From NCBI GenBank assembly GCA_964199315.1, contig OZ116702.1:20522001-20586000 (forward strand): a DNA stretch of 64,000 nt, given 5' to 3'. Shown here in pieces: positions 1,359 through 42,746 of the stretch. Source of the stretch: Orbicella franksi (taxonomy: Eukaryota). The first letter of the stretch is position 1. Each line of letters opens with the position of its first letter. The position numbers were made by a program, and so were the translations under genes. The notes under the pieces are model-generated. The model was not told the origin of the DNA and made no database searches. It saw only the letters and a list, made by a program, of their open reading frames with translations.

Positions 1359-1922
1359 CATTTTAATAAGATTTCAATCAATCAAAATATGTCTTTTCGG
1401 TTTTACTTTAGAGAGTTAAGCTGATGATAGTGTCCCTTGAAATATCTCCCTGTCTCCAGTTGCCACGTCATCATTTCATTACTTCAGCGTGCTGAAAGAC
1501 ACTCTATTCTCTCCTCACCAGGTTTTGGGAGAGTATCAATAGTAAAAGCTATAGTGTAGTGTTACGTTGTTTGTTATCCAGGAAAACTGCGACACCAAGT
1601 AGCATTTCGATACGACAAGTTTTGAAAACGCCAACTTGTGTATTTGTCGATTTCCATTTTAATACAATAACTCAAATGTTAATCTGAGGTGTTCTTATCG
1701 CTTTGTATCAATCAGCAATCAGATTGATTTCTGCACTAGAAAGGATTGATCATATGCAGTTTAACTTACACTTAGATGACAACCGTAGTTAATGAAAACC
1801 GTCATTTTTCAGGACCACGATCAGGAAACACTTAGCAAAATAATGATTACCTGTCAGAAGGTACCAAATTATTCTCCTCAGTTTTTGCGTACATATAGCC
1901 ATTATGTGAACAATATAACAAA

Positions 1923-2228
1923 GCTATGAAGATGCGATTGATCATCGCAGTTATACACACAACTTCTAAAAAGCAGTTGTGAAATTAAAGCCTGAAAAAA
2001 AAAATTCAGGCCTGAACGGGATTCGGACCCATGACCTCTGCGATACCGGTGCAGTGCTCTACCAACTGAGCTATCAAACCAACTGGGAACTGGTCACATT
2101 GTGAGTTCTAAATATACCCGTAGATGGTGAAGGATACAAGTGAATATATGAAAGACCCATCTACGGGTATATTATCTTCATATCTTTCTCCGCAGTTCAA
2201 ATATATGGTCTTTCATATATTCACTTGT
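1923..2228 (-). mobile_element. tRNA-cored retroposon-like repeat with internal inversion (copy A)
   Basis: Flanked by an 11-bp direct repeat aatataacaaa (1912-1922, 2229-2239). Contains a tRNA-like core on -. Bases 2157-2228 are inverted fragments of the same unit. Homologous to 43727-44049. Confidence 0.8.
2009..2080 (-). pseudogene. 72-nt tRNA-like cloverleaf (Thr-GGT-like) inside the repeat
   Basis: Minus strand GGTTTGA TA GCTC AGTTGGTA GAGC A CTGCA CCGGTAT CGCAG AGGTC ATGGG TCCGAAT CCCGT TCAGGCC. A-box intact, B-box has TTC>TCC, acceptor stem pairs with two G-U, and a T-run follows 4 nt downstream. Confidence 0.7.
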
Positions 2229-2928
2229 AATATAACAAAACTAACCTCCTTGTCTCCATCATAAACTCTCTGACTTTGAGAAAAGGAAAATCACTTTTCG
2301 TTCAAGGGCACTCAAATTGGCTAATTTGCTATCATAAATCCTCCTCGAGGCCGGAAGCCACATCGCACAGAGCCGTTTGAAGTATTTTTACCAACAGAAG
2401 TACTAGTTTTTCTTCACTATACATTTTATCGATAAATGAGAGACTGAAAAATTATAAATCTCTAATTGTTGTTTCAAAGACCTAGTCAGGGGCACTATTG
2501 ATTGGCCTAGCGACTACTGGATATCAGCTATTATTAAATTCTCAACTTTGAAGACCTTTGAAGGGTGTTTTTCTGATTGATTCACTGAAACTCGATGTCA
2601 TTTGGTATACACCGTAGCTCGGTTGGAAAATGACGTCGGAAAGTATCGCTTAGCTTAATATTTTGCTCGGGAAGCGAATGTGCAAAGCGAAAACGGCTGA
2701 AAACAGCAAATATGGTTGATCAAAATTTCCCAGTTATTTCCCAGATATATGTGTTACTTGTGATATATAAAAGTAATGTGCAGCAAAACGAACACTGCGC
2801 CACAAATTTTTCCGCCTTTTCAAACCATCACTTCGTTTAGATGAAACTGAAGCGCCCACTACTTCCAGAAAATAAATAATAATAAAACAATTACTGCACT
2901 CGCCTCTGCTGTTGGATACATGCATTCA

Positions 2929-3003
2929 TTTTTTTTTTTTTTTTTTTTTTTTTACTATTGCATACAATACTAACATTACTTACACTACTAAGACTTCTTA
3001 CAA
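2929..3003 (-). mobile_element. 5'-truncated non-LTR retrotransposon tail with poly(A)
   Basis: T25 run (2929-2953) plus 50 nt, flanked by the exact 16-bp direct repeat tggatacatgcattca (2913-2928, 3004-3019). Confidence 0.8.
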
Positions 3004-3258
3004 TGGATACATGCATTCAACGTGAGCCTTTGGAACAATAGTTAACTACCATGTTCGATAAATGCGGCTCTACAAAAATTTGGAAGATCTACCGATGTTT
3101 GGGGTTGTTTTGAATGAACCAAGTATTTCACTCGCCCGTCATAGATAATTATAGCCGACTTGGCGAGCACAGGCCTCGTTGGCGGTCCAGCATGCGCTCT
3201 AGAAATAATTGTTAACTACGCATCGTGCTTCAAGATTGTTACTAATAAAGTTAGAAGG

Positions 3259-3428
3259 TAAATTTAACAGTAAGTGTTGTATTGTAAGTATAGTATAGTA
3301 TTGCTAGTAGCGTATCCCACATTGTAAGTAAGTACTGTTTTGTAAGTAGAGTATAGTATTGTTAGTAGCTTAAGTATCGCACATTGTAAGTAAGTACTGT
3401 AAGTTTTTGTATTGTAAAGAAAAAACAA
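3259..3428 (+). mobile_element. 5'-truncated non-LTR retrotransposon tail with internal tandem duplication
   Basis: Flanked by the exact 12-bp repeat aaagttagaagg (3247-3258, 3429-3440). A-rich 3' end. An internal ~50-bp unit gtatagtattg...cacattgtaagtaagtactgt occurs twice. Confidence 0.7.
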
Positions 3429-3477
3429 AAAGTTAGAAGGATTCTTGAACTACAAGAGACCAAAATAATATGGAACA

Positions 3478-3625
3478 CTGGGCCGGGTTGTTCGAAAGTC
3501 GGTTAACGCCAACCCAGGATAAAAAGTTAACAAGTACTTTCCTTTTTTGTATAAAAGTGTTTTTCACTGCTTATGTTTTGTGCGCGCAGTTCAGGTTTGA
3601 GAATACTCAAACTCAAAACTGTAGA
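3478..3625 (+). mobile_element. Left half of a Harbinger-like MITE
   Basis: Starts ctgggccgggttgttcgaa, which matches the reverse complement of the end at 57746. Shares tgtttttcactgcttatgtt with 57589-57746. Confidence 0.55.
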
Positions 3626-4767
3626 ACAAACAATAAAAAAACCCCTAACAACGCTCCATTCAATTTGTTTCCTTAATTATTTGTTCCGTGTCTGAATATG
3701 ACTAACAACTTAGATCCCAGCAAGAGTCTAAAACTATAGTTCCTTCCCAGTCTCCCAGCTGTTTATTTCTATCCGAGTTAATGAATAACAGCCACCTTAA
3801 TTAAACGGATCCAAAGGACGCACTTACCGCTGCGAATTCACGCATCTGCACGCAGGTAGAACTACATGGTAGATTTAAAATGAGATTCAGGTCATAAGCA
3901 TGGCCGCGCACAGCGGTTATAAGTGAGGCAACGTGACCTTTGTCGGGGTCCGCATTACATCATCCCAAAGTGACTGTCTGAAAAATATGGCTAACGGACG
4001 GGAAAGGACTTTTATGATAAGCTGATGAATAAAAGGGCTAAAGGTAAGGTCAATGTTCAAATTGAACAACATTTTTCTCATCAATTGATGAATGACCGGA
4101 TAAAGGCTAAACTGTCACTAACAGTTAATTTATTGTTATTTGTTATTGAATATTACTCTGTCGCCACCCCACCACAGTAATTTTGCTCAGTCATATTACC
4201 TGGCGAGAATCATTTGTTTTGTCTGGTCAACACTCCGACGTTCATTTGTTGCTGGTTTGTTTTAGGGACACGCATTATCCTTTAAGAAACATAGAAACAT
4301 GATTCACAATTTTCGAAAAATAACTATACTGCCACCAAATTCCGAACTTGCGGATCAAGGCAGACAAACGAAGGATATTAAAAAGAGGTGCTTTTGTATA
4401 GTCACTCCCATATGAAACAGAAAATTTAAATTAAATTGCCTTTACTTGTAATTTGGGTTTATCGCTTTGATACTGAAGCAAGGACAAGATTAACAAGATA
4501 ACAGGTGATATTTTTACAGCGAAAGGAAATTTGAGCTAACCACCTGCCGATTTCATACATGGATGGCTTCGATTGCTCTCGTTATCTTCATTTTTCATTC
4601 CTACAAGAAGGCTTTTCTTTTCTTTACAGCTTTTCTCGTAGCTTTCTTCTGGTTAACTGAATTTTAACTCCATTACCTGTTGTACTCTTGCACATTTTCT
4701 TTTCTTTCAGTTGTAGTCAACTGAAGACAAATGTAACCTCACTGAATGTGAAGCGGATAACACAGAC

Positions 4768-7643
4768 ATGAGAGTATTGTCGCTCGCCCTTGTAATATTT
4801 CTACCAACAATTTGTGCTTTCCATTCAGGTAAGAGTTTACAGAATGCTTTGTATGCTCTTTCAAATAAAATTTATCGCTAGAAGTCCTTGATTGTATCGC
4901 AAATCGCGGTGTTTACTAATCAGTTGCACCAATTAACTGCATGATTGCACTGACTGTAGTGAATGTTTGTTACCATTTGTGTCAACAACCATGGAATATA
5001 ATGTTATTCCAAATCACCAAGTAAGAATTACTGTGATACCGCTTTAATTTAAATAACTTCAGAATATAAGTCACAAATAAGGAAATAGCAAACGATATGT
5101 GTATTTATAGGTAAAGAGGAAGCTGCAATATTTGTTTTGAATTCTTCAAACAAAGTTTAGTCCCGGAAGCATATTGGTTAGCAAATTCTTTTAAACCACA
5201 AGAGTGTATATACCTAAGATGGCATTCAAAAACAGGAAGCGAAATGAAACACATTATGATGAACCTTCAGTCTCGTGGGCGTGCATGCAATAAATCAGGT
5301 AGTAACCACAAACCGCACAGCAGTTTGCCCTACCAACTGTGCTACCATGCCGCTGTAAAAAGCAAGTTGTATTCAAATCCGTAATAGACTAAAGTGATTC
5401 AAACTCATGACCACTCTGTGTTACTCATTCAATTAGGGAACGCCAAGCCAAAGGAAAGCGATGACAAACGGGATTTTCTCGCTGATGCTATGCGTGAGAT
5501 GGAATCTGGTGGAAAATCGTCGAATCTAGCATCTGCTGTCAGAAGAGTTCCAAACGTAATCAGAGTGGTTATGAGACCGGAAATTCCCCCGACCCGTCAC
5601 CACCACCGTGGACACCGACATCGACACAAGGGTGGCCTTGCCTCTGTTTTCAAATTAGCCGAGGGATTTAACAAACTATCTATGCAACTCCCCGGTAGTC
5701 TCAGAAACAAGACAGCTCGCTTATTCAATACAGCAAACACATTTAAAGAAACTGTTCGATTTCTCGAAAGAGTCAATAACCAACTGGACGATATGTCAAG
5801 ATCTCAAGACAAGACAAATAGACTGACAAAAACAGTTAAACCTGCAAACGCTACCCTAAAAGGTGACGACGAAGTCATGGTGACGGATTCTTTTCCATTA
5901 TTTCCAGAACTGAGAAGCATCGTTGAACATGGGAAGCCATTTGATCCGGATGTAACAAGAGCAGCGTTTGCGAGAGCAAAGCAAATTGTCTGGGATACCG
6001 TTGGGCAGGATCCGACAACCACTTCAGAGATTGGTCACTTGAATAACACTAAATTGACTAATGCTGTAGCTCTGCTTGAAATGGCTGTCCGAGAGGCCGA
6101 GAAAATGGAAAGAAATAAGACAAAAACTGTCGATCAAGAAACAAACCCCATCAAAATGATCCCTAAAACCTCCCAAACCAATACGAAAGTTAATCGATCA
6201 AAACAGGATGCAGTGCAATTAAAGATCTTAAAGAATATTCTTTTACAGGAACTAAAACAAGCAAACTACACTAAAGAAAAAGCTGGCATTCTCATCAGTG
6301 ATATCCCATTTCAGAAATTAAGAAACGAAGAGCAAAGCAGCTTAATGCAAAAACTTTCTCCCTCAACAGCCAATTCTTCTGTGGATTCAAACATGAATCC
6401 CGGCAAAGGAAAGCCAGTCGGTGACACCCAGGCTCTTCTCGAAAACTACACTTCGTTTATAACCAATATATTGAAGGCTGCCCATCTTAGTGTTTTAAAG
6501 AACTTGACAGGTGCGGATTCATCAAGTTCACGGGAAAACAACGCTACAAACTTAAACCGGAACACCCAACAATCAAATACTAAGGAACAAAGTGCGCAAA
6601 ATATTTCTCTTCAGCAGTCAAGTGCAGTCCAACACCTGAATCCGACAAAGGAGCAGCAAAAGGGGCAGCAGTTATTCTTTGCAAATGCAGCACAGGAACA
6701 ACAACAACAACAACTACAGAAGCAACATCTTCGGCCAGTCATTTTGTCTAAAGAACGTCTTGCGGCGCGAAAGGCTTTTGGTACAGCGCAAAAGTTGGTT
6801 AAAGCATTCCTAGCACGACAAGAACTCTATAAAGCAGAGAATGAGTTCTTCAATAAGATTCACGAGATGTTGAATAAAACAACTCCAAATGGTCCTTTGA
6901 CTGCAGGTCAAGCAAGCGACGCAAAAAATTCTAAGATCACTAGTCAGCCCACAGCTGCAAGTCCAATTCATTCTCCACTGAGTCAGTCTCCAATAAACAC
7001 TGCAAGCAGCCCATCCACTGGCGAAGGAGACAATCAGAAACAAACATCGGAGGCCCAGAAAAAGTTTGAAGAGGCAGCTCACCTTGAGGAAAAAGTGGCA
7101 GCCCAACAGGATGAGATGTACGACGCATTAATGGGCCATACAATTGGAACTGTTAAGGGTGGGGGAGATGGGGCATTTGATGAGGAAGGAGCCATTCGCG
7201 AAACTCCAGAACAAGACGGAGTAGAAGACTCTTACAACACGGAAGACTATGGCGATTTCAAGGATAGTGATGAAGAAGCAGAGAAAAAGTTCTATCACGA
7301 CCATAGTCAAGGCGATTTGGAGGCCGACGCAGTGGGGGAAAGTTCTTTAAGCCTTCGTAGCAGAATCAGCTCAGCGAGGTCAGAACAGTCTGGAAGCGCA
7401 GAATCTAGTGGAGTCGCCATAACTACGTCTAAAAAAGACAAAGCGTTCAATAATAAAAACATTTATTCCACAACTGAAACGAGTGGAGAAAACTCTGGTG
7501 ATGGTAATACCGAGGAAAAGCAGTTCAATATGTACTTGGTTTCAAATTCCTTCAGAACAAACAGACATAAAACCTTTCGGAAGATCGCAAAACCCCTTAG
7601 CCAAAGAAGAGAACGAAAAAGGAAGACTCATTACAAAAATTGA
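4768..7643 (+). CDS. Secreted low-complexity protein 1 (~755 aa; His/Arg patch, Q-rich, acidic block, basic tail, Cys-free mature part)
   Basis: Exon 4768-4828 encodes MRVLSLALVIFLPTICAFHS+G|gtaag (signal peptide, phase 1). Acceptor ttag|5437 joins in frame to the 749-aa ORF ending TGA 7643. A 5'UTR intron is likely (acceptor tttctttcag 4710). No recognisable domain. Confidence 0.85.
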
Positions 7644-8676
7644 ACTTTTGGCATACGGTTAACAGATAACTGAAGGCAGGGTTTTGTAACGTATTAACAG
7701 GCGCATGTGAAAAAACCGGGTCCTAAATCATAACGCCAATCTCAGGTTGCTATTTGGAGCAATTATTACTGAGAAAGTTAAAAGGGCCAATTCCGCAAAA
7801 AATAAAGGATATCCGTTGTTCTAGTCACAAATATTGTAAAAAAAAATCAATTATAATTCATAATCAGAGTAGATGATCTTTGACGAGAGATTAATGTTGG
7901 TTGTCAGAGAGCGGCTTACTAGAAGAAGAGTCCACGTGTTTCCTGAATTAATCAAAACGGTTACCTAACCGTTAATGGCTTTAATGACATTTCTTCTTTC
8001 AAAAAATGCCTGATTGTTTAGTATCTATCAATATCAGTGTAACGTCCCTCGCTTACTGTCATCTTCAGATAATTAAGAAACTGAAAATAGCAGATGCATG
8101 ATATTCAAAGTACTCCGCCTTAAAATGATATTTGTTTGTTTGTTTGTTTTTTCTAAGTAAATAGTATTATCATAATTTATACCTGGCGAGGGTTTATTAG
8201 CCATTAACCTGAATTAAGCTAATCCCGGCGCGGATCGATGATTTCTAGTATAATGCCTGAAATAAAATTTTATTCTGTGATAGTCATTGTTTTTTGTTTT
8301 TAATGCCTTTTCTTGAATTGTCTCAGGCTTACCCTTACCCTAGTCTATTAAATTTAAAATAGAAATAAGTTGAACATGTTGAAAGAGTCTTCAAATAACA
8401 AATATATAGAAATAAAGAAAATAAATTGAACAAGTTGGCTCATCGGTGTCAGCAGTTGAATACTGCTACTTCCCCCGAATGGTATGCTAGTCTATTGCAG
8501 GTAGAATCGCATAGCTCAGAGAATTCTTGCACCCTGTTTGGTTACTTAGGCGAGATATTCAGCGTGGAATTGCGACTCTTGAAAGCGAAACACGTTGAAT
8601 ATTGCAACATATTCACACAGACTAGACTTAAATGAAAGAAGAATTAAAAGAATTAAAAGAAGGCTATGCGATCCAT

Positions 8677-8821
8677 GGAAAATTCATAACCTGACTCGTG
8701 AATTCCACGTTAAATTTCACTTGAAAAACCAATATCGCACTCATCGCTTCGCGATTCATGTGATAGCGGTTTTCCGCGTGAAATTTAACGTGGAATTCCC
8801 TCATCAGGTAATGAATTTTCC
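8677..8821. repeat. Foldback (hairpin) core of an interspersed repeat
   Basis: ~45-bp imperfect inverted arms ggaaaattcataacctga...ttaaatttcac / gtgaaatttaac...tcaggtaatgaattttcc. Confidence 0.7.
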
Positions 8822-10513
8822 TATAATACCACACCATCACTTCACCCCAATCAGTATTTTGTTGGCTTTCTCCTACAATAGGCCCTGAAATGACCAGATG
8901 TGTTATCCAAAAACACATAATAAGGAAACCAACTGATCCACGAATGTTGAGTGTTATAATTCCTGTTTTCATTTTCCGTAACCTCTATTTAGCCCCGCTT
9001 GCTCCCCCCTTTTCCTCTTCAGGTCTTTTCTCCTCGGTATGTTACGGTAACGAGATCATGCTTGCAATATGAAACTTCACGGACCATCGAAGTTATTTAT
9101 TTAAATAATAAGCCAATTATTGAAAACGAATGATGGATAGTCAGGGCATTATTCATTTGCCATAAAATTAAAGAAAACTCATAAATGTAAATAGAGCTTT
9201 ATCTAAGGATTGTCAGCGCAACTCTTAGATACGTAGCGATCTGGTAAATGTAAATTATGTCAGGAGCAGTGGTGGCCATTCAAAGAGGAATTGGTTGAAT
9301 TCTGAAATATCACACTAGACATTACTATGGCATAGTGAATTGAATTGAAATTTCCTTCTGTCTCCTACCGCAATGTTAGGTTTGTTTTTTGATTCTTTTT
9401 CGAGACATGCAATTTATATTAGCAGTGCACTAGAGTTGGATCAGCAGGTATTAATTGTGCGACCCAATTGAGGTTAATGCCTGCCTTCATTAACCTCAAA
9501 AACACAAATTTAATGGTTCAATACTTCAAATAGTTCATTTAGCACATGAGACCAATGAGACCTTTAACCTTCTGGTAGTGCTTTACCTGAGTCGGAGAAG
9601 GAAAAATTATATTTAGCCTATCTATCACATCAATTTTGAGTGATTTAGCTTGGAACAAACTTTTAGCCAAATGTACTTTTCTACTTTAAATCTACCATCA
9701 AATCGTATGTCCCTAACAACAGACGAAAAATATTTTGGACTGTTAATGTAAATATTTAATTGGTCAATAACTGCAATTTTATGATCCGGGTTAGCAAAAT
9801 ATTTTATTCTTACATCAGCAGCCGAGATTTGATCTCTGGTGATTTGGGTGCAGACTTCTTTCACCAATATCGTCAAGAGTACCTCAACCTGCGGTAAGTT
9901 GCATATGACCCAACTGTCTTAGATAATCCCCTTTACTTTAGTCCTCCTAGTTTATGATGACTTACCATTAAATAATTGTTTTGATAAGGTTTTATTTGGA
10001 GCGTCTTTGGTGATAATATTTTGACATCCTTTGAGAGTTATAGTAAGTTTCGTTTAAAACGTAAATAATGTTAATTATATCTTGTAACACAGTGCAAACG
10101 CTGAAGCGAACGATTTCGTTTTTATTCTTGTCTTATGGTTAGGTTAAGTTAAAAAGCTACGATAAAAACACGTCAACAAAAGCAATTCCGAAAGCGAAGG
10201 TAAACCTGTAATGATATAAACATTGCAGGCAAGATAATCATGTTACGATGAACTTGTATGCTGCCTTTTTAAATTAAATTTACTTATTTCTCCGTTAATA
10301 AATGACCTGGAGTTTTCTTTGATCTGGGATTCGAGATGTATTCTGGTTTCTTGGCCTTACGTTTGTCTCGCTAATACTTGTCATATCATGTATTCGGATG
10401 TTTGTTTTGGTGTCATTTAGGTGGTCAGTGATATTACAGTAGACACATCGTAAAGTATTTTGTCCTTTACTTTTTTTCTCAGCCTTTCTAAAGCAGATGC
10501 AAGGAATTGAAGA

Positions 10514-20698: not shown

Positions 20699-23600
20699 TC
20701 CCTTGTAAACATGGCGTGCAACTCAATCTTTGTACCCTAAATCGAAAGTAAATCAGCTTTACATAACAACCAGTATCAAATGAAGAAACGAAATACGTGT
20801 GTTTAAACTTGTAAAACCGTTGTCCAAAACCTTTTCTCTACTGTAACATTGGCTAGTGCTCGACAACAAATCTTCATGGGTCGGAAACTATCACGCATTG
20901 ATAGTTTTGAATTAAATTGAACCGATTGAAGTAAGTAGAGGGAAAACGGATACTTATTCAAATTACCTGCCACCAAAAAATGATGTCAGTTACACGACAT
21001 AAAGAAGTACTTCCACTTACCAAAACGTTTTCCTTCGTCTAATCGAAGTGTAGTCGCTTTCAATACATAACCGTAATCCCAAACACTGTCATGCCTTCCT
21101 TTACGTTTTGCGACATACCGGCTACTTTTAGACCCCGTAGTTTATATGACGTAATGTTTTGCCACCACCACAAGCCAGTTGCTGATTTTCTCTCTTTGTT
21201 CTGGTTACTTTTGAGCTTTATTGCCCTTAACTGGTTCTTGTTTAGCTCAAACTAAGGTGCAAGTCGTTCTGTCTAGGTTTGGCCCTCGTTTTTCCATTTG
21301 ACTTGCTATCAATTGGGGGCGTATGAACCCTGGTTTCTATTATGGTACACCTTACAGTCATACCTGCTTCAACCTGTTGTCATTATTCATATATATAAGC
21401 ACCAATCCCCAGCTCCCCAAACAACTCCCTTGCGTTCCAACCCAAAACGTTTCAATTTTTCCTGCTGACATATGTTTTGGGCCTGAACATGTATTTCCCA
21501 TACGCATTTCCTATAGTTCACCTATATTTGCTTCATCTGTATAATCCAAGCTTCTTTGATGCCTTTTTGGGATAAAATTAATATGTTTTGTCCATAATAA
21601 ATATACTTCTTCTTAAAGTTATATGATCTAAAGTGTTTTCTCCATCGGTAAAGTGATAAGACGTCTGAATGCGAAAGCGATGCTCATTGATTTTGTAAAA
21701 GCAATAATCATTCACTTGAACCAACAGACGTGAGCTTAAAAAAATTTTTTTTTTTGTCTTGTGTAATCATAATTACTCAAAACAGTCAGCGTTAGAACGT
21801 TCTGTCAGACAATATGATTTAGCGGGAGTTACGCACTACGTTCACCTATTGCCCAAATTATACAACTGTTATGACGGGTTGTACAGGCTAATTGCTTTTA
21901 CCCTTTCACACCCCCTAACGTAAAATAGGGAAGAGACCCATCTTTTTGGCAACGAAAAACCTTATTTCGGTAATAACGCTCTCCACCGGCATGTTACGAG
22001 CCCTTATGGAGGTGGCCGTAAGGAGAAGCCTAATTGTATTGACTTGCTAACGCCATCGCTGGATATTGCATTGAATTGTACTTTAAGTACAAAAAGGCAG
22101 AGAATGATAGAATGTAGATCAAAGGGTTTAATCAGGGTTGCCTCTGCATATATTTGGTCGTTTCTTGTCAGCTCATTTTCACGCGGTTTTGAATGGCTTA
22201 TAATCCCCCCCCCCCCGCCCTCCCCTTGGCTCCTACCCATGCCAACTGCCGATTTGACTTAAAACTTGTTTATGTTTTTAATTATATTGCTGGTAATTAA
22301 CTCTAGTAATTTAGGTAGCAAATATTGTTGGGAACGACCATACGGTTCTCCTTACCTTTAAATGGCATCAAGTCCAGTAATATTATGTTGAAGTACTATA
22401 CGATACCCACTATAACATCCAAATTCCAATTCAGCCAGGATAGAGGACCCAGAAGAAAACCAGCCAAGGCTGATGTGACTTCCTCGCGAAATGTTGATTT
22501 TTTTTTAAATTCAAGTCGTCGCCTTGAGTCACTGACCCAGATCACGTTTTTGTTTATGTTGAACTTTACAAATGATGAAAAGATAAAGCTTGTAGTTTAA
22601 TATGGGTCGAGGGGTTGAGGCAAATAGCCACAGTCGCTGAAAGTAAACTTAAAAAAACCGATGCTTAAACGATAAAGATCTTTATCGGGCGTTTACCTTG
22701 CAACAAGTAAGGTGAGGTCAGTTTTTTAAGTTGATTGGTTAGGGAAAAGAGATCTATCTCAGAATGGCGATCTTTTTCTACACGTATATTTGAAGTTTTA
22801 AATTTGAGAAAAGTTTCTCCTGAAAATTGAACACGCGCAATTTTTCATCTGTCACATTTCTGACACATGGCCATGTGACCAAGACGTTTTATTTCGAGGA
22901 TTGAGGAGAACTGCACAGGAGATTGTGCAAACATTCAACACTCCAATATCTGAGCTATTAATGAATCCAGCGGAAGTAGATTACAATTAATCCAAATGAT
23001 GGGTAGTGTACATGCTGTTCAGATGTCCATGGTCGGCAGAGTGAAAACAAAGGCAACCAATTTCTTCTTCTGTTTAAATCACACTCGTCGATTACCGCAC
23101 CTGTAATCTCCTTAAGCAATCCTTGTTTCGCATGTCAGAAGTATTGGAGCATCTCGGAAGCGAGCTGATGAAGCCGTTTATCTGCAAGAATGGTCATAGG
23201 TTTTTAAGTTTGAAGCTAGCAGGTGAGAAATCACGAGACAATGAGCACAGTTAAAGTGTTGCTAAAGCGTAGAAACCAAAAATACTACCGCAATTAAAGT
23301 AATTTTAACAATTATCACCTTAATTTCTATTGATTTTGATAACACAGTTGCCATCGATGTTTTGCTATTCTCAAGCTATAGAGCTGATATTTTGTAAACT
23401 CGATAAGGTGCAGAGTGGTAAATATTTAATCTTGCTTAAGTTTAAAGACTTTCTGGGTTCTTATGACGTCATTTATCGGAAATGACCAAATAGGAAAAGT
23501 TTACAGGCCCCCTTTGATTTGGATTTTTATTTTTTGAACGGTAAGTCCCTATTTTATTGACGTTTTGACCACACAAATGTATTTTTAGTTATGAACATTA

Positions 23601-23931
23601 CGCTGTGGTCGTTCGCAGTGAAAACAAGCTATATTATTTAAACAATGAACGGTCATTACAAACAAAGTAAGAAGACCTGCTTCTCTTTGTCAATTTGGTG
23701 TAGAAACTGAAAAAACAGAGTAAATTTCTCTTAAAAATCCAAGATTTAGGAAGTATTATAGGCTTTTCGCCGATGCCGTTTGTTTTCACTTCAAATTGGT
23801 AAATGCTCTTGAGTAAAATCATCCACTACTTCGCAACAGATTCATAACCTTTGGTGATAAACTTCTGTCGTTTGCCTAGCAGGTACAAATTTGGGATAAA
23901 TAAACAATATCGAACAAGGAAAGGCTGTGGA

Positions 23932-26900
23932 ATGAACAACAGACTTCTTCTAACGTGCCTTACATTATGTTTGTCGCACACAGGTGAGTTCAACGATAGT
24001 CGATATTCAACATCGTTTGGCTAACAGTATATTGGCATAATGGCAGATTTGTTTAAGACATGTTCCTTTTCCTTCCTGCTGTGCGCCAGGTCTCAACAGG
24101 TTTGATGTGTCTTCCATGGCCCATATGTGTCTTCTGTAATTTGTTTTTGTTTATCTCTTACAGAAAATTTCATTTGCATTTTAGGAAAGCAACGTTGAAG
24201 TAGCAGTTTTCCTAATCTATCCATTCGACATCATTTGAGTTGTGATTTGACTTCCTGTTGACCATGTCAGAACTTAGTAACGTGTACTGAAGATTTTATC
24301 AGTAATTCAAAAGCTTTTAAACCGATTATATTGTGAACCCGTTTCACACTTTTAAAAATAATTTTATTTGCCTATTTTTAAAATAAAATTGTTATTCTTC
24401 GACTCGACTGAGCCAACATGGCGTACGTCGACGGGATAGAATGCAAATTTCCAACATCCACCTGAGTATCAGTTATTTTATGTAATAATGCAATGATTCA
24501 GACGTGTTTGAAAGTAAAATGAACCTCAAAGTTTTGCTTGTAAATGTATATCGTAAAGAGGTGCAAATGTCATTGCACCACTTCCACGGGAAACCTGCAT
24601 ATATGGGTCAGATGTCCATTGACCAGTGTTAGTAGCAATCATAAATTGCACCCAAAAAGTTAATTGAGAGTGAAACAGGTGTTACATTGTGTTTTTTACT
24701 CAAGGACTACTACTGTCTTTCTTGATTCGCGGTGGCTTTACTTACTCACGACAAAATTCAAAAAACAAAAAACAAAAAACAAAACAGATTGAAGGCTCCA
24801 AGATATTTTTCTTCCTACAGATATTTTTTTGTAGATTACGCCAGCAAAATAAAATAGTGGCTCATGGACCTTATTTTTGATTTCCTAACTCGGAAGCAAA
24901 AGACTAGCATCACAGTTTAAACATTAGCTAGTATACCTCTACCTTTTAAAATGTTGAACTGTACGATTTAACTGATTAGTAGCTTTATCGGCATGCAAAG
25001 CTGTCGATTGAACAGTCAATTACTGTACAAACTAAGATTTATTTCTACCGATCGCCTTGGTACAGGTACCTTGAATTGGGCGACTTTGGTGGCAATAGAG
25101 CTAAACTTTTCGCTAAAAAATTAGGGTGGAAAAACATTTTCCAACTGGTACATGTTATAAATATACAGAAGCACGTTAATTTCTCTTAAACTGATTTGTT
25201 TACTTTATTCTTCCGTTGGTTTCTCCAGCTTGTTTGGTTGTCGGTTTGTTTGTTTGCTTGTTTGTTTGCTTGTTTGTTGGCTATTTGTGGGCAAGGTTTC
25301 AATTATCAAAGCAAGTGTATTTTGTCCATGTGAGTTCTTGTCAAATTGTTCTCATTAATCTTTTTATCTTTAGTCTTCTCCGCTCCTCTCGAAACTTCTA
25401 CTGTGAAGTCTGGAGCAGAGGAAGGTACGTTTCTAGATAAGTTTGTCTTTGAAATGCAAGATTGATTAAAGATTTCAGAGGTAAGGCCAAGACCAGTCCG
25501 GAAAAGGACCATTCGTTGAGGTTACCAGTATAAGTTGACCGTCGTATGAAAAGACAAGCAATCCGTTTTCTTAAAAAAACTGGAATTTGTGGGTTGGTTA
25601 ATTTAGATAACCGTTTTCATTCGAACAGGCCAAACAGCGGTTAGCGTTTTCTCAGAGATCAACAAAATACAAACATTTTCATTTAATTCGTTCTTAGCGC
25701 ATCCGGCGACTCCAAAGTCGGTAAATCTGGAAGATAAAGGTGAGTGGAATTTTCAAACGATGCATGCGATTTGTCCGTGCATGGTCTGGAAAACACTGAA
25801 TCACCAGAGAAGAAACAAATGCAGAGAGCATTTCCAGTTACACACTATTGTGGCACACAGTTGCCGTTTATTTCCTTTATGACGAAAAAGTCAACATCAC
25901 AGCTTTGATTGTAAATATAGTCACCTTCCAGGGATTCAATGACGCTATACAGTACATAAGACGTGGAATGCCTCCAAATTTTACTGCTTTGCATTAGGTG
26001 TTTACATTGTTTGTTTTTCTGTTGGCAAGCCTATGTGCCATTTGCGTTTTCCTGCCCGAAAGATAAACCTCAAGTGTGAGAGTTACATTGTAATGTTTTT
26101 TTTTATGTTATTACTCCGCACTAGACACCGTTGATTTTCAAGTTTTAACAACCTTATGTTTTATATTTTTAGTAAAAGAAGCAGTGCAAAAAGCTGAGTT
26201 AGATGCTAGCCTTGCTGCTCAGGATGCAGTGAAGCATGGGCATAAGGCCGAATCAAGAGTTGAGAGAATCAGAGGGTCGGCTGAGCCAAGTCATGAAAGT
26301 AATGATGAGACTGCAGACGACAAGCCAAATCAAACATCCAGAAAACATGCGACTTTAGGCACGCTTTATATGTCTATTTAGTTTATCTAAAGGAAGTACT
26401 TTTCATGTTTTGAGATGAGGTCTTATTGGGACGATTTTAAATTGAGAGGCGAGGGTAATCTGACATTACTTTGGTTTTTCTATGCTCATGGTATTTTTTC
26501 CTCTTGGCGCCATCGGGAATTTACGAAACAAAGTTAGGTACATACATGTACGTATATATAATTTACAAACTTCCAACTGAGACAATTTGCTTCCCTCATT
26601 GTTAACACACAAGTGGAAGTGCGCAAAAGGCTACTTCTTTTGGTTTGGTTTCTTGATAGGTTTTGTGAGGTCTTTGCCTTTTACTCCTTAATGTGTAGGA
26701 CCTAATGAAATGCTAACTGCTTGTAATGTTTATCGTATTGCTAAAATTATTATGGCTATACACTTTTTCAGTAAGTGACATCGACGAAGGACCTCACATT
26801 AAGCGAGTAAAAGAACATAAAGTGAACCGAAAGCCAGGTGGTATAGGCAAAATGATGGGATTGGGTGAGCTAGGAGACCTCGGAGGTAATAACAATGATT

Positions 26901-29900
26901 ACAAAGAAGACACCAGATTAGAGGATCGTTTAGCTATGGAAGCTGAAGAGGAAAAGAAATACGAAACAGGAGAGGGGTACGGCGGTGGAGGGGGTGGAGG
27001 AGGTGCAGGAGCAGGGTGGGAAGATGGGGGAAAAGGTGTCAACTGGGCCACAAATATACAAAGACAGGACGCTGCAGAGGTACGGAATGGAGATTTTAAA
27101 ATGCTGTCAATTTAATTTGTTTTATCCCTAGGGCTGGCGAAGAACTACAACCAACCATTCTGCCAACCTGCGTCTTTCTAAAGCACTTTTCGCACACACA
27201 ACCTAAATTTATTGTTTCTGTCAGGATGTGGAGAAATCCTTAAATAGTGAGGTTAAACATATTCATATCGCATAGTCGTACTAACAAAGAACACTTAAAG
27301 AGAGATGTAGCAATTTAGCTGTCACGCGATAACTTCTTATATCTAACACAGAAACAAAGCATTCAGGCCCAGGTCGCCTCTGAAAGTGCTCATGAGCTGG
27401 ACGAGATTCAACGTGCAATCGCGGCAGAGTCCCAGTCCTCTCGTGGTTCTGCTTCCATTGGCAATGGAGGTGCTTCTGTGGTTGGCGGAGCTCCTGCAGG
27501 GGTAAAGAGACATTTTCATGCTGTTGGCTGTTTTCGCCGCAGTAGAGGGACTGGTTTTGCTGTAGTTGTTACAATAATTCAATCAAAGCAAAAGCTGTTC
27601 AATCAGCTGCCATCGTGTATTTATCTGACTGACTGCTTAGTTGACAAATGCACATGCTTACATCTACGTACTATGAATAGCCTCTATAGGTACTTTAGTA
27701 ACACCAAAAGGTTGCCGTTTTCTCACGAATCTTGTTGCAATTTCTTTGACACAACAGATATAAAGAGTTTGCGATGATCTCGACTATGGTAAATGTGACA
27801 AAGAGGACCTTGAAGCTTCCTCATATAATTTCGCATAATATTTCTTAGGGTATAAAAATGCATCTAGCATTGCTTACAGAGCAGAGATGGGAAAGATTTA
27901 CTCTTATCATCAAAAAGCATAGAGAGCTTTACAATATCACAGATGAGTCATCACGAATGGTGACGGATTATAGAAACATGTTTTGCGCAATTAAGGTCCT
28001 AAGCTCTCACGAAATGTAGCATGCAGAGGCCACTGAAGTAAACGGATGTCTGTTAATTTATACCTTTTTAAATAAACAGGCACAGCAAGAAGGTATACAA
28101 CCGAGAATATCTAGCCCTCAAGAAGAAGGAAGAGGAGGTCAACCAGTGGCCTTTGGGGGAGGTCAACAAAGAGAGAACCAAGGTAAGCACATCACTTTCT
28201 TTATGGATTTCTGGTGACTTTGTGGACAAGCATAGGTCTTACTCTCCGTCTTACCCTGTGTTTTCGTTTAACTATTTTCGCGCTTCTCTTGACCAACTCT
28301 TTATCTAGCTAGCAAATTTCTTTCTGCCAAATGTTATTCAAGGAGAAAAAGATCAAACCCATCTCAATAACAATGATGTATAAATAAAGTGGAGGTAAGA
28401 GTACGACTAGATGCTGAAGAATTTCCTTCAGCAGAATGTCCCCGGACCGCCGAACAAGGACGTTAACTTCTATGTGAATTTGATCACATACGGGAAAAGA
28501 TAGTGTCCATTGTAGCATGCTGTTTGAGCTGGCTGTTTGACTTTCTTTAAGAAATTCTTTCCGTCGAACAAGATTAGGAAATAGTTCTATCTATAAATGA
28601 ATTGCGTTACTGCATTTGCATGTTCTAACTGGACGTCTTGTTGCACGTGTCTTCCTTTTGCATGCCTGCATGATGACGGACACAATAAAATCCCGGCCAC
28701 GTAGACGAATTTCAGGAATATGCTTCTCCTTATACATCCCAACAATCATCTTTTGTTCAGCCAGGTTGGTTTAACAGACCTTTCATAAAATTTATAACAA
28801 ATTTGGTTTACCTTTTTATTAGGTGGTTCTCTACTTTCTAACCAACAAGAAAATGTGAGAGGTGATTTCAAATCATTTGCCCCTCCTTTTGGCGTCCTAC
28901 AGCTTTGAATAATTCTCGTTTAATTGTAGTGCAGTAACAGAAGTAAAAGAAGTAAATCGAATACGAAGAAGCCCTGGCACTTTTGATAAATTGTTCAAAT
29001 TCATTGTTAAGTGGCCCTTTCTATCATTTTTTTGTTTACTGAAACATTGCCTCGCAGAGATTTCAAGCCTTATTCACCAAGCAGACAAAATGTTGCCAAA
29101 CGAAATGAGAGGATCTTCACAACAAAGCAACATGGAACTCGGTAGTTTGGGAGCACGTGGAACTCAATCTTTAAATGGTGGCATGGAAGGCTTTGGAGGC
29201 CTTGAAGGAGCGCAACAACTAGGTGGACAAGGTCAGGCAGCACCAGTGGAACAAGCTCCCATGGGAGGATCAGAGAGAACGGGATTTGGAGGGGCCATGG
29301 ATGCAGGTGCGATGGGACAGGAGGCGATGGGACAAGGGGCGATGGGAGGAGGTGGAAGATTGAGTGAATCTGCGGTAAGCCGCATGAGTGAAGGTTCCCT
29401 TGGAGGTGGTGGTTCTTTGCAAGGAATGCAAGGTGTTCAGAGCGTTCAAGGAATGGAAGGAATGCAGAGCATGACATCTGCTTTTACAGGAGGACAGCAA
29501 GTTCAAGGAGGGATGTTATCCGATGGTGGTGGTGTTAATGCTCTACAAGGGCAAGGAATGATGGACGGTAGTCTTCAAAGTAACAGTCTTCAAGGAGGCG
29601 CTCTCCAAGGAGGTCTACAAAGCATGATGGGTGGAGGACTAGCGGGACTTCCGGCCATGGGCGGTGGGGGAGAATTTGGACAGCAACAAATGGCATTTAA
29701 AAAGGTAAGTGACTAACAATACATCAGCATTAAAAATGCCCACATGGAGATGCAACATCTTCCTGCCACCTGACGCGCTTCAAAGGCATACTGCTGCTGT
29801 TATTTTTGATTAAAGCTTTTCTAAATGCACATCTCTTATAATAGTCACAGTATTTCAATTCTTTGATAATTGATAATAATAGGACCAAGCGTATAAAAAT

Positions 29901-31459
29901 CATTAATGCCTCTTGTATTGAAATTTGGTGTCCGGTTAAAGACCTGTGAAAAGATGCAGATATGATACATTAAAATTCTGCTATAAGCCCTGGCTTATAG
30001 AACTAGTAAAAGGGGTTGGGTTGGCTTACAAACAAACTCAGTGGGAGGTTTACAACATCCAATAGTATCAAAACGTGTTTTCCATTTAATGGTTTTAAGC
30101 TTTTAACCCCAAAAGTAAGAAGACATACGGCGAGGCACAGAGGTCATTGTATGGAGCTTCCTAATAATGACAAAGACCAGAAGTTGCGCTGTATATGTTG
30201 GATTTTATGGTATTGCGGTAATTTTGTATTCCACGGTTTGTATTCGCCGTTCGATGATGGTTGTCCGCACAATAGAGAGGCATACCTGATATTCTCACAT
30301 AAAATAGCTCGATTAACCCATCACTTGTTTCCTGAGAGAAAAATAAAATATTCCACCCATATCCATAGCGTTTGTAACAAAGGCAATTAACAATTAATCC
30401 AAAGCTCAAGATTTTAAAAATACAGAACCCTCAAACATTAGCAATTCTCTTGTGTCCAGTTAAGAGATACAAAGCTTTGCAGTTTGTTCTCTTTTAATAG
30501 TGAGCTTTAAGACTGATAAAATTGCCCCCAGACTGATGCATTAAGCTCCACTCCTTCTGCTTTTCAGGCTTACGGCCATGAGACTTAATCGTTTTTTACT
30601 AAATATTAACAAATGGACAAAGCAATTACCGACTGACGACTTACTTTTATCCTTAAACAGTCAACAATAGCAAGACCAAGTGATTTCCAGGTAACGACAT
30701 CACTTTATTCTACTGACAGTACCGCTACCTACACATAACATCACGAACGTTACTGGACGGCGTTCTCATAATACATAACTTTTAAACGTAAAGTTAAACC
30801 TCTGTTGGGCGGACACCATCATCATCTTTTATAATTTAGTTTATTCTTTAACATATTTATCATTTTCGTCTCTTGCTCCATTATAAAGCGGTAAAACCTC
30901 AATTAAAATATCCCTCTTTCGTGGAAGTTCAGTAAGATTACATCAATGAAATGAGTCAGCTAAATTACTAGAAAGACCCCAGTCGTGGAAGGGAACATGT
31001 AAAAATCTCGCTATTAACTTGATTTGTCAACAAACAAGCGTATTTCAACATTTGAGACATTTTGCATAGCTGTTCTAATCTAAGTTTATTTCCTAGCGCT
31101 CCAAGACACATCAGAAGGAAGAAAGCAAACGTAAACTAAAGAAGACCTCACAAGAATACAAAGATGCTACTGCAAAGGGTTCAACGCCAGCTAAGCATCT
31201 TTTGGAAGACAGAAAGACTGTACCGGTAAAAAAGGTTGATGCCATACTCTTATTACATGTGTTGATAAAAACCAAAACTTAGTAATAATGATTATACATT
31301 CACACTTAATGAGCCCTTCCCCCATTTTTAAGCAAGAAAGGGTCCTTCTCAATTTCAGCGTTGTATCTATGACCATCTATCTAAAATTTGTCTCTTTCTT
31401 GTCCTCTCTAGAGTAAAATGACAAAAAGGCAACATTCAAAACACTCGAAAACGCAGTGA
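23932..31459 (+). CDS. Secreted Gly/Gln/Met-rich protein 4 (~563-583 aa)
   Basis: Exons 23932-23983 (MNNRLLLTCLTLCLSHT), 25374-25424 (VFS|APLE...), 26173-26358 (or -26298), 26772-27079, 27352-27501, 28080-28182, 28823-28861, 29058-29704, 30661-30690, 31097-31234, 31412-31459 (TGA). All junction phases are compatible. Probable 5'UTR intron (acceptor 23882). Confidence 0.75.
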
Positions 31460-42616: not shown

Positions 42617-42746
42617 NNNNNNNNNNNNNNNNNNNNNNNNNNNNNNNNNNNNNNNNNNNNNNNNNNNNNNNNNNNNNNNNNNNNNNNNNNNNNNNNNNNN
42701 NNNNNNNNNNNNNNNNNNNNNNNNNNNNNNNNNNNNNNNNNNNNNN
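42617..42746. other. Assembly gap (130 N)
   Basis: Run of N. Confidence 1.

What the first reader, a model, noticed from the sequence alone, without database searches (positions are those of the whole stretch)
4768..31459. Cluster of four orphan secreted genes with shared architecture: candidate extracellular structural or self-assembling protein system
Seen: four consecutive genes each start with a 52-61-nt signal-peptide exon ending in a phase-1 intron, and none has a recognisable domain. Genes 1, 2 and 4 are co-oriented, nearly Cys-free in the mature part and low-complexity (Q-rich, GGM, G/Q/M-rich). They carry acidic segments and end in K/H/R-rich tails, and each appears to have a 5'UTR intron just before the signal exon. 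Known: Gly/Met-rich abductin (scallop hinge) and Gly/Gln-rich cnidoin (Hydra nematocyst) are elastomers, and biomaterial genes often cluster. Inference: a co-regulated kit for a secreted material (cnidocyst or spirocyst tubule, mucus or adhesive, mesoglea, egg coat or skeletal matrix). Paralogy between the genes is NOT demonstrable by eye.
Basis: partly seen in the sequence, partly recalled or inferred. Interest (0 to 1): 0.75.

Follow-up and report, generated by a model that had tools for sequence, protein, structure and literature searches.

The report
Conserved coral array of secreted disordered proteins
Four neighbouring stony-coral genes for secreted, mostly unstructured, cysteine-free proteins are real, expressed, selectively constrained and kept in the same order across distant corals. 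One is a glycine/methionine "rubber-like" protein that alternative splicing builds with one or two modules, but their cell type and job are still unknown.

Summary
Four single-copy genes (Orbicella-type genome) each begin with a 52-61-nt signal-peptide exon ending in a phase-1 intron. None has a Pfam domain. Genes 1, 2 and 4 are co-oriented, Cys-free when mature, low-complexity, with acidic blocks and K/R/H tails.

Corrections:
- RNA reads show gene 2 has an extra 27-nt exon and two alternative 5'UTR exons.
- An internal donor 26 nt before its stop joins the first GGM module to a second one (15168-15931). This gives 598- or 844-aa isoforms in roughly equal amounts, and the donor is conserved in a distant coral.
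- Gene 3 is a different kind of protein: 152 aa, helical, with a KR site.
- The four genes are the 3' end of a longer array; at least four more such ORFs lie just upstream, already noted by this scan.

All exons are under purifying selection (dN/dS 0.00-0.29). The order of genes 1-2-3 is kept in a coral only 49% identical in gene 1, and an Acropora protein matches gene 4. Apart from the two GGM modules, no similarity exceeds shuffled controls. All homologues found are scleractinian.

A shared secreted material is plausible but untested, because no cell-type data could be reached. The closest analogues (abductin, cnidoin, the vertebrate SCPP cluster) match in design only.

The parts
4768..4828 (+). 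Gene 1 signal-peptide exon (MRVLSLALVIFLPTICAFHS, phase-1 donor GTAAGA)
   Evidence: The Stylophora and Montipora RefSeq orthologues carry the equivalent signal.
5437..7643 (+). Gene 1 main exon. The full protein is 755 aa. Features: a conserved K-R site after G.AK.K..D, a His/Arg run, 12 NxS/T sites, a Q-rich stretch, an acidic block and a basic tail.
   Evidence: There are 43-44 homologues, all from stony corals where named. dN/dS is 0.23. AF2 pLDDT is 41, showing isolated helices.
9863..9892 (+). 3' end of one alternative gene 2 5'UTR exon, spliced to 10482
   Evidence: The loose-end consensus of the RNA reads was located in the window.
10168..10197 (+). 3' end of a second alternative gene 2 5'UTR exon, spliced to 10482
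10482..10571 (+). Gene 2 exon holding 32 nt of 5'UTR and the 58-nt signal-peptide coding part (ATG at 10514; phase 1)
   Evidence: The junction 10571|11170 has 26 reads in X24 and also appears in X3 and X1 contigs.
11170..11196 (+).
   Evidence: Junctions 10571|11170 and 11196|11917
11917..12633 (+). Gene 2 N-terminal, non-repetitive exon (239 codons). A minor in-frame alternative acceptor lies at 12202.
   Evidence: The exon is 80% identical in L001/L003 and 49% in L002/L004. dN/dS is 0.15.
12896..12925 (+). Gene 2 30-nt exon
   Evidence: Junctions 12633|12896 (56 reads) and 12925|13024 (55 reads)
13024..13988 (+). Gene 2 GGMa module: QMQQQAM helix, a (GGM)n core (G 52%, M 30%), an acidic block and a basic tail. 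It carries its own stop at 13986-13988 (short isoform, 598 aa) and an internal donor after 13962.
   Evidence: The donor AG|GTAAACAACAC is conserved in L003 and in the distant L004. dN/dS is 0.11.
15168..15931 (+). Gene 2 GGMb module, the alternative last coding exon (long isoform, 844 aa). It is a paralogue of GGMa.
   Evidence: The junction 13962|15168 has 38 reads in X24 and an X3 contig. GGMa versus GGMb scores z 8.6-13.9 above shuffles. GGMb is conserved in L003 and L004. dN/dS is 0.29.
20644..20698 (-). Gene 3 signal-peptide exon (55 nt, phase 1)
   Evidence: It matches the N-terminus of P0048.
19773..19835 (-). Gene 3 exon 2 (GSSRRAQKR|EIKIDRQRPWEY), with a conserved K-R site
19219..19257 (-). 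Gene 3 exon 3
18336..18637 (-). Gene 3 last coding exon. It holds two invariant Cys, and the C-terminus ends in G or G-K/R.
   Evidence: It is 76% identical in the distant species. dN/dS is 0.13.
23932..23983 (+). Gene 4 signal-peptide exon (52 nt, phase 1)
   Evidence: It is 100% identical at protein level in L003/L006.
25698..25739 (+). Gene 4 exon 2 (42 nt)
   Evidence: The exon and its splice sites are conserved in L006. The model is in frame and colinear with P0077.
26173..26298 (+). Gene 4 exon 3. The donor is GTAATG here but GCAATG in L006, so this boundary is less certain.
26772..27079 (+). Gene 4 exon 4 (acidic part plus a poly-Gly run)
   Evidence: dN/dS is 0.03.
27352..27501 (+). 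Gene 4 exon 5
   Evidence: All 50 codons give the same amino acids as L006, so dN = 0.
28080..28182 (+). Gene 4 exon 6
28705..28764 (+). Gene 4 exon 7
29058..29704 (+). Gene 4 G/Q/M-rich exon (core G 32%, Q 12%, M 9%)
   Evidence: Only 6 representative clusters match it among 1.84 billion proteins. dN/dS is 0.17.
31097..31282 (+). Gene 4 last coding exon as modelled (K-rich tail). The 3' end is uncertain, because the Acropora protein has 10 extra residues before it and a different end.

Best explanation
The region is the 3' part of a conserved, stony-coral array of single-copy genes. They encode secreted, cysteine-free, intrinsically disordered proteins (genes 1, 2 and 4), with one small helical secreted protein (gene 3) embedded in the opposite orientation.

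Shown:
- the gene models;
- transcription of gene 2, and probably of gene 1;
- purifying selection on every exon;
- deep synteny among corals;
- the absence of any known domain or confident fold;
- two gene 2 isoforms, carrying one or two [Q/M helix - (GGM)n - acidic block - basic tail] modules.

Inferred:
- The proteins enter the secretory pathway. Genes 1 and 3 are trimmed at a conserved Lys-Arg site just after the signal peptide.
- They act outside the cell, or inside a secretory granule or capsule, as non-covalently assembled material rather than as enzymes or receptors.
- The Gly/Met and Gly/Gln/Met cores would give flexible, hydrophobic, elastomer- or condensate-forming chains.
- The paired acidic blocks and K/R/H tails would give electrostatic self-association, or binding to polyanions such as sulfated glycans, mucus or capsule matrix.
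- Alternative splicing of gene 2 would set the number of elastic modules per chain.

Which material is involved is not determined. Candidates are cnidocyst or spirocyst content, mucus or adhesive, mesoglea, and skeletal matrix.
For: - Signal exons and gene models.
- No Pfam family. AF2 pLDDT 41-43 with isolated helices.
- Composition, charge blocks, Cys counts and tails.
- dN/dS 0.00-0.29 at dS 0.4-0.66, including the GGM exons.
- Single copy in the 497-Mb genome.
- Order and orientation of genes 1-2-3-4 kept in L001/L003/L006, and of genes 1-2-3 in L002/L004, which is 49% identical in gene 1.
- In Stylophora the gene 1 and gene 3 orthologues lie on contigs of the same length (699,694 bp), and in Montipora capricornis likewise (54,133,718 bp), which suggests one scaffold or chromosome in each.
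- Gene 4 has an orthologue in Acropora muricata and a 603-aa product on a 2,252-nt Logan contig, which must be a cDNA.
- In one more species a minus-strand MFS gene follows gene 4, as in the window.
- RNA: exon-limited depth of about 40-100 in the raw reads of X24; Logan word depths of 1,400-8,900 in X3 contigs (a poor measure of expression); 38 reads across 13962|15168 against about 44x read-through.
- RNA libraries hold 0.33-0.52 of 4700-14400. Gene 2 alone can give only about 0.24, so gene 1 mRNA is probably there too.
- The K-R site is conserved in gene 1 (K-K in Montipora) and in gene 3.
- Upstream on the same strand lie further domain-less, Cys-poor ORFs, two with 58- and 73-nt phase-1 signal exons.
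- Cnidoin shows that a Gly/Gln/Met-rich disordered chain (17% Met) can serve as a cnidarian elastomer (PMC4321713).
Against: - There is no direct evidence of secretion, assembly or location.
- No cell-type or proteome data could be linked to any of the genes.
- No pair of genes is demonstrably related, so a 'kit' is inferred only from adjacency and style.
- With no cysteines, the proteins cannot join the disulfide-linked capsule wall as cnidoin and minicollagens do.
- Gene 1 has many conserved amphipathic helices and looks more like a specific binding or scaffold protein than a bulk material.
- Gene 3 does not fit a matrix role.
- One polyA RNA run carrying the same species label (X22) gave no reads at all on gene 2. 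It was not tested whether the organism is present in that run.
Confidence: 0.5

Rival explanations
1. Cnidocyst or spirocyst cargo. The proteins are made in cnidocytes, trimmed at the K-R site like other capsule proteins, and fill or line the capsule or tubule as non-covalent elastic or polyanion-binding matrix. This is a specific version of the main reading.
For: A signal peptide followed by a short propiece ending in Lys-Arg is called conserved among nematocyst proteins in PMC4321713. Genes 1 and 3 have such a conserved site. The Gly/Gln/Met-rich composition resembles the elastic domain of cnidoin. Basic tails could bind the anionic capsule matrix (inference).
Against: There are no minicollagen-type Cys-rich domains and almost no Cys. 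Genes 2 and 4 lack an evident K-R propiece. All homologues found are stony corals, although cnidocysts are shared by all cnidarians. K-R processing is common to many secretory proteins.
Confidence: 0.2
2. Skeleton-related matrix. The proteins are stony-coral-specific calicoblast products that condition the calcifying space or anchor tissue to skeleton.
For: All detected homologues of genes 1, 3 and 4 are scleractinian. There are Asp/Glu-rich blocks (DDDDD in gene 2; EDYGDFKDSDEE is nearly invariant in gene 1) and S-x-E sites. Expression is strong in adult colonies.
Against: Overall acidity is modest compared with SAARP/CARP-type proteins. The text of the Acropora millepora skeletal proteome paper mentions no Gly/Met-rich component.
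Confidence: 0.12
3. Precursors of processed peptides. The acidic blocks neutralise the cationic C-terminal tails, which are cut off as antimicrobial or signalling peptides (the arminin-like layout, recalled from memory). Gene 3 would be an amidated hormone- or toxin-like peptide.
For: The order 'acidic block then K/R/H tail' recurs in gene 1 and in both gene 2 modules. Each protein has many dibasic sites, 10-11. Gene 3 ends in G or G-K/R in all species, which resembles an amidation signal.
Against: The proteins are very large (557-844 aa), and selection acts on the whole length, including the GGM cores. The tails are among the least conserved parts of gene 1. No cleavage products are known.
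Confidence: 0.1
4. Functionally unrelated neighbours. The genes share only generic properties of fast-evolving secreted proteins, and stay adjacent through shared chromatin or by chance.
For: No paralogy is detectable between genes. A phase-1 intron after a signal peptide is a generic bias (my recollection, not checked). Gene 3 is of a different kind. Coral genomes keep much microsynteny: the MFS neighbour is also conserved.
Against: At least seven adjacent co-oriented genes have the same unusual style: Cys-poor, domain-less, with a large low-complexity exon. At least five of them (genes 1, 2 and 4 and the two upstream ORFs on L013) also end in a basic tail. Genes 1 and 2 appear in the same RNA libraries.
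Confidence: 0.18

Closest known systems
Abductin (bivalve hinge-ligament elastomer)
   Same: Both are secreted, and both have a Gly+Met-dominated repetitive core. The GGMa core is 82% G+M with a 9-nt, 3-residue repeat period.
   Different: As I recall it, abductin is a small protein built from Phe-containing FGGMGGGNAG-type decapeptides. Here the unit is GGM without Phe, embedded in a 598-844-aa protein with a long non-repetitive N-terminus, acidic blocks and basic tails. No sequence comparison with abductin was possible, so the resemblance is in composition only.
Cnidoin (Hydra nematocyst elastomer; PMC4321713)
   Same: It has a signal peptide, a propiece ending in K-R, and a disordered Gly/Gln-rich core with unusually high Met (17%). 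Gene 4 (G 32, Q 12, M 9%) and gene 2 are similar in composition, and the QMQ motifs of gene 2 recall QMQGCGQQ.
   Different: Cnidoin has minicollagen-type Cys-rich domains at both ends and Cys inside each repeat (GCGQQ). The coral proteins have 0-2 Cys. No homology was detected.
Vertebrate SCPP gene cluster (caseins, enamel and SIBLING proteins)
   Same: Both are tandem arrays of genes for secreted, Cys-poor, disordered proteins. In both, members are no longer alignable and are recognised by position and 5' gene layout: a non-coding first exon followed by a signal-peptide exon. Here that layout is shown for gene 2.
   Different: SCPP introns are phase 0 (from memory), whereas here the signal exons end in phase 1. 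There is no conserved N-terminal SxE cassette, and no evidence of descent from a common ancestor. The lineage is unrelated.
Coral skeletal acidic proteins (SAARPs, CARPs, acidic SOMP)
   Same: They are secreted, have low-complexity Asp/Glu-rich stretches, occur in stony corals and lack known domains.
   Different: In the genes here the acidic blocks are short parts of otherwise neutral or basic proteins. They were not found among named skeletal proteins in the homologue lists.

Membership tests
Cnidoin / minicollagen-linked capsule proteins | Minicollagen-type cysteine-rich domains at the termini | tested here: not met
   Mature Cys count is 0 (gene 1), 2 (gene 2) and 0 (gene 4). The feature is as described in PMC4321713.
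Cnidoin / minicollagen-linked capsule proteins | Repetitive QMQGCGQQXP motif in a Gly/Gln/Met-rich core | tested here: not met
   The composition is similar, but no GCGQQ repeat is present (sequences).
Cnidoin / minicollagen-linked capsule proteins | Signal peptide followed by a propiece ending in Lys-Arg | tested here: inconclusive
   A conserved K-R lies shortly after the signal in genes 1 and 3. None is evident in genes 2 and 4.
Cnidoin / minicollagen-linked capsule proteins | Location in the nematocyst wall or tubule | not testable with these tools
   No cell-type or proteome data could be linked to the genes.
Abductin | Gly- and Met-dominated composition | tested here: met
   GGMa core is G 52%, M 30%; GGMb core is G 38%, M 24%.
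Abductin | Phe-containing decapeptide repeats; a small protein made almost only of repeats (recalled from memory) | tested here: not met
   The repeat unit is 9 nt (GGM). The cores contain almost no Phe, and they make up only about 15-30% of a 598-844-aa protein.
Abductin | Sequence homology to molluscan abductin | not tested
SCPP-type cluster | Tandem array of genes for secreted, disordered, Cys-poor proteins | tested here: met
SCPP-type cluster | All introns in phase 0, and descent from one ancestor (SPARCL1) (recalled from memory) | tested here: not met
   The signal exons end in phase 1. Gene 4 phases run 1,1,1,0,0,1,1,0. No paralogy is detectable.
Coral acidic skeletal matrix proteins | Strongly Asp/Glu-dominated sequence | tested here: not met
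   D is 7-8% and E about 6% overall in gene 2. The acidic blocks cover only about 60 residues.
Coral acidic skeletal matrix proteins | Detected in a skeleton proteome | not tested
   Accession searches in full texts gave nothing, and supplementary tables were not held.

The most novel reading that the evidence does not exclude
The four genes and the ORFs upstream form one ancient array of eight or more genes, analogous to the vertebrate SCPP cluster. It would have arisen by tandem duplication and diverged beyond sequence recognition. It would encode a self-assembling, non-covalent (coacervate or elastomer) material of corals. The abductin-like Gly/Met protein would have its number of elastic modules set by a conserved alternative splice. 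The embedded, highly conserved small helical protein (gene 3) would act as a dedicated secretory chaperone or assembly factor for its aggregation-prone neighbours.
Probability: 0.12. Interest if true: 0.8.

Novelty: new variant of a known kind. Interest (0 to 1): 0.5.

Why it matters
Stony corals build reefs, yet many of their lineage-restricted genes have no known function. This locus holds several such genes, and they are clearly not junk. They are under selection, and they have been kept in the same order across corals that are only 49% identical in gene 1. At least one gives abundant exon-limited reads in adult colonies.

If they prove to be components of one secreted material, they would give a genetic handle on a coral structure that proteomics probably misses: the Gly/Met cores contain no tryptic sites. 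They would also add a Cys-free, Met-rich elastomer-like protein with splice-tunable module number to the few known animal elastomers.

The locus would also be a non-vertebrate case for asking how arrays of disordered secreted proteins evolve, with conserved position but unalignable sequence.

Tried and rejected
- Pfam on ten exon translations and on the upstream ORFs: nothing.
- AF2 on gene 3 (12 sequences) and gene 1 (12 sequences): pLDDT 43 and 41. Fold searches were therefore not run, as they would be meaningless.
- ESM Atlas look-alikes for gene 3 and gene 1: no usable hit.
- A separate 'gene 2b' for the second GGM exon: rejected. No signal exon lies between 14000 and 15167, and reads join 13962 to 15168. 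Direct splicing from 12925 to 15168 (skipping GGMa) was not seen.
- Paralogy between genes 1, 2 and 4 and the upstream ORFs: Smith-Waterman scores against global and 15-residue local shuffles give z <= 2.8. The tblastn E-values of 1e-11 to 1e-15 between gene 4 and the GGM exons come from composition alone.
- Further GGM copies in the genome: none.
- Sea-anemone or other non-coral homologues of gene 1 (single sequence and 12-sequence profile), gene 3 and gene 4 exon e: none found. The word-index and length limits mean this is not proof of absence.
- Gene 4 beyond gene 3 in the most distant species: not found within 10 kb, where a Pao-type retrotransposon sits.
- Context look-ups for RefSeq proteins of Stylophora, Montipora and Acropora: not on record. 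One ENA place came without DNA.
- Literature: accession numbers, 'secreted protein C-like' and methionine-rich+cnidocyte+coral gave no paper. The supplements of the Stylophora cell atlas that are held do not contain the gene.
- Run X22 gave zero reads. This is uninformative without a control stretch, and no read-laying run was left.

Full report
**What is there**

The window is from a stony coral of the Orbicella type: gene 3 encodes exactly the O. faveolata protein LOC110051140. They lie at 4768-4828 (61 nt), 10514-10571 (58 nt), 20698-20644 (55 nt, minus strand) and 23932-23983 (52 nt).
- No exon translation matches any Pfam family.
- Each gene is single-copy in the 497-Mb genome.

**Gene 1** (4768-4828 | 5437-7643; 755 aa)
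- The mature protein has no Cys and 12 N-glycosylation sequons.
- It has a His/Arg run, a stretch with 35% Gln, an acidic block (-10 and -7 net charge per 30 residues) and a tail that is 50% K/R/H.
- Alignment with 11 homologues shows it is more than low complexity. A K-R (K-K in Montipora) follows the signal peptide, and many amphipathic-helix blocks are nearly invariant, for example ARKAFGTAQKLVKAF, EEKVAAQQ and EDYGDFKDSDEE.
- AF2 predicts isolated helices with no fold (pLDDT 41).
- All 43-44 homologues are strong. Those that carry a name are from stony corals (Stylophora 63%, Montipora 52%). A profile search adds nothing beyond them.

**Gene 2, resolved by RNA reads** (raw polyA reads of X24, Logan contigs of X3 and X1)
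- Two alternative 5'UTR exons, ending at 9892 and 10197, are spliced to 10482.
- The exon chain is then 10482-10571 | 11170-11196 | 11917-12633 | 12896-12925 | 13024-....
- The large exon from 13024 (GGMa) either runs to its own stop at 13988, with a 3'UTR to about 14400, or uses a donor after 13962 and joins 15168-15931 (GGMb).
- That junction has 38 reads against about 44x read-through, so the 598-aa and 844-aa isoforms are about equally common in that sample.
- There is no separate gene for GGMb. No signal exon lies in between, and the junction is in frame.
- GGMa and GGMb are true paralogues (z 8.6-13.9 above shuffles).
- Both modules, and the donor sequence AG|GTAAACAACAC, are conserved in a moderately distant coral and in a very distant one. 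The two-module splice choice is therefore old.
- The cores are 52% G + 30% M (GGMa) and 38% G + 24% M (GGMb).
- Exon-limited depth is about 40-100 in X24. Logan word depths reach thousands in X3, but those are a poor measure of expression.

**Gene 3** (minus strand; 20698-20644 | 19835-19773 | 19257-19219 | 18637-18336) is of another kind.
- It is a 152-aa protein with a signal peptide and a short propiece ending in a conserved K-R.
- It has two invariant Cys, predicted helices, and a C-terminus ending in G or G-K/R in all species.
- It is the best conserved of the four, at 76% identity where gene 1 is 49%.
- AF2 gives no confident fold (pLDDT 43).
- Full-length spliced products on 1.1-1.3-kb Logan contigs show that orthologues are transcribed.

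**Gene 4**
- I built the model from conserved blocks and splice sites shared with locus L006.
- It has nine exons, all AG/GT, and an open 557-aa frame. Cys occurs only in the signal peptide. Composition is G 18%, A 9%, Q 9%.
- An exhaustive search with its G/Q/M exon finds only six representative clusters among 1.84 billion proteins.
- One of them, Acropora muricata XP_067022522.1 (automatically named 'secreted protein C-like'), is 566 aa and colinear with my model over every exon.
- A 603-aa relative sits on a 2,252-nt Logan contig, which must be a cDNA.
- The 3' end of my model is uncertain.

**Are the genes real and constrained?**

Against the species about 75% identical in gene 1, dS is 0.40-0.66 and dN/dS is 0.00-0.29 for every exon tested. 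That includes both GGM exons (0.11 and 0.29) and two gene 4 exons (0.03 and 0.00).

**Synteny**
- In one species (L001/L003/L006) the order and orientation gene 1 > gene 2 (N-terminal exon, GGMa, GGMb) > gene 3 (minus) > gene 4 is kept.
- In a far more distant species (L002/L004/L005) genes 1, 2 and 3 are kept.
- In Stylophora the gene 1 and gene 3 orthologues lie on contigs of the same length (699,694 bp), and in Montipora capricornis likewise (54,133,718 bp), which suggests one scaffold or chromosome in each.
- In another species gene 4 is followed by a minus-strand MFS gene, as in the window.

**The array is longer than four genes**

Both foreign loci have a domain-less open frame upstream of gene 1 that runs off the start of the locus (products on record 1,496 and 1,572 aa). 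In the window's own genome the same ORF (1,493 aa) ends 713 bases before the window. Further upstream on the same strand lie:
- a 627-aa ORF preceded by a 58-nt phase-1 signal exon;
- a 700-aa Cys-free ORF ending in a run of 14 His, preceded by a 73-nt phase-1 signal exon;
- a 398-aa Cys-free ORF with poly-Gly and GM-rich stretches and a basic tail.

I confirmed the ORFs but could not test the anemone claim.

**Relatedness**

Apart from GGMa and GGMb, no pair among all these proteins scores above composition-matched shuffles (z <= 2.8). As I recall (Tordai & Patthy 2004; not checked here), phase-1 introns are favoured just after signal peptides in general. The shared 5' layout is therefore weak evidence for common descent.

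**Expression together**

RNA libraries from several studies hold 0.33-0.52 of the words of 4700-14400. Gene 2's exons can account for only about 0.24. The excess in the best runs (about 2.5 kb) matches the gene 1 mRNA (compare). This is consistent with co-expression in adult colonies, but it says nothing about cell type.

**Interpretation**

What is shown is a conserved array of expressed, constrained genes for secreted, disordered, Cys-free proteins, with a splice-tunable Gly/Met protein.

What is inferred is a role as non-covalently assembled secreted or granule-stored material. The G/M and G/Q/M cores would act as flexible hydrophobic chains, and the acid-then-basic ends would drive electrostatic association or polyanion binding.

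Cnidoin shows that such a composition can make a cnidarian elastomer (PMC4321713). But its defining Cys-rich domains and GCGQQ repeats are absent here, so this is not a cnidoin. The abductin and SCPP-cluster resemblances are likewise in design only.

The specific material (capsule content, mucus or adhesive, mesoglea, skeleton) could not be decided. No accession, name or supplement search linked these genes to a cell atlas or proteome.

Rival readings (processed peptide precursors, unrelated neighbours) remain open.

**Verdict**

This is a new variant of a known general kind, namely arrays of secreted low-complexity proteins. Interest is moderate, and the decisive experiments are clear.

Noticed in passing
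G000:C5:20500608-20521288 (L018:7609-8802; L013:2058-4160 and 7652-9535; L014:3808-8289), just upstream of the window: Four more large, domain-less, Cys-poor ORFs lie on the same strand. One is GM/poly-Gly-rich, and one ends in a run of 14 His. One is 1,493 aa, with an RGD in a C-terminal block that is conserved in two other corals. Two of the four are preceded by 58- and 73-nt phase-1 signal exons. The array therefore extends well beyond the finding.
   Followed up: partly
window 11196 -> 12202: A minor in-frame alternative acceptor inside gene 2's N-terminal exon removes 95 codons (5 junction reads against 20 for the main form, X24).
   Followed up: no
window 10400-16399, run X22: A polyA RNA-seq run with the same species label gave zero reads on gene 2 out of about 10 million records, while X24 gave 1,271. 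This could reflect a stage or tissue where the gene is off, or a run without this organism. No control could be laid.
   Followed up: no
window 28594-28704: A non-coding block just upstream of gene 4 exon 7 is about 86-95% identical to the other species. That is far above the surrounding intron, so it may be a regulatory or splicing element.
   Followed up: no
window 33776-40112, 44515-46422 (-), 50424-51893, 42617-42746: Downstream of the array lie a class-C GPCR-like gene (ligand-binding exon plus a 7TM exon) and an MFS-type transporter gene on the minus strand. That neighbour is conserved next to gene 4 in another coral. There is also a THAP/DDE transposase-like ORF and a 130-N gap.
   Followed up: partly
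L005:1-3256: In the most distant coral examined, a Pao-type retrotransposon ORF (1,893 aa; DUF1759, Pao_retrotransp, rve) lies about 7 kb beyond gene 3, where gene 4 would be expected.
   Followed up: no
window 20566-21361 and 23075-24754: The divergent intergenic region between gene 3 and gene 4 aligns at 71-72% over long stretches with the other species, which is compatible with a shared bidirectional control region.
   Followed up: no
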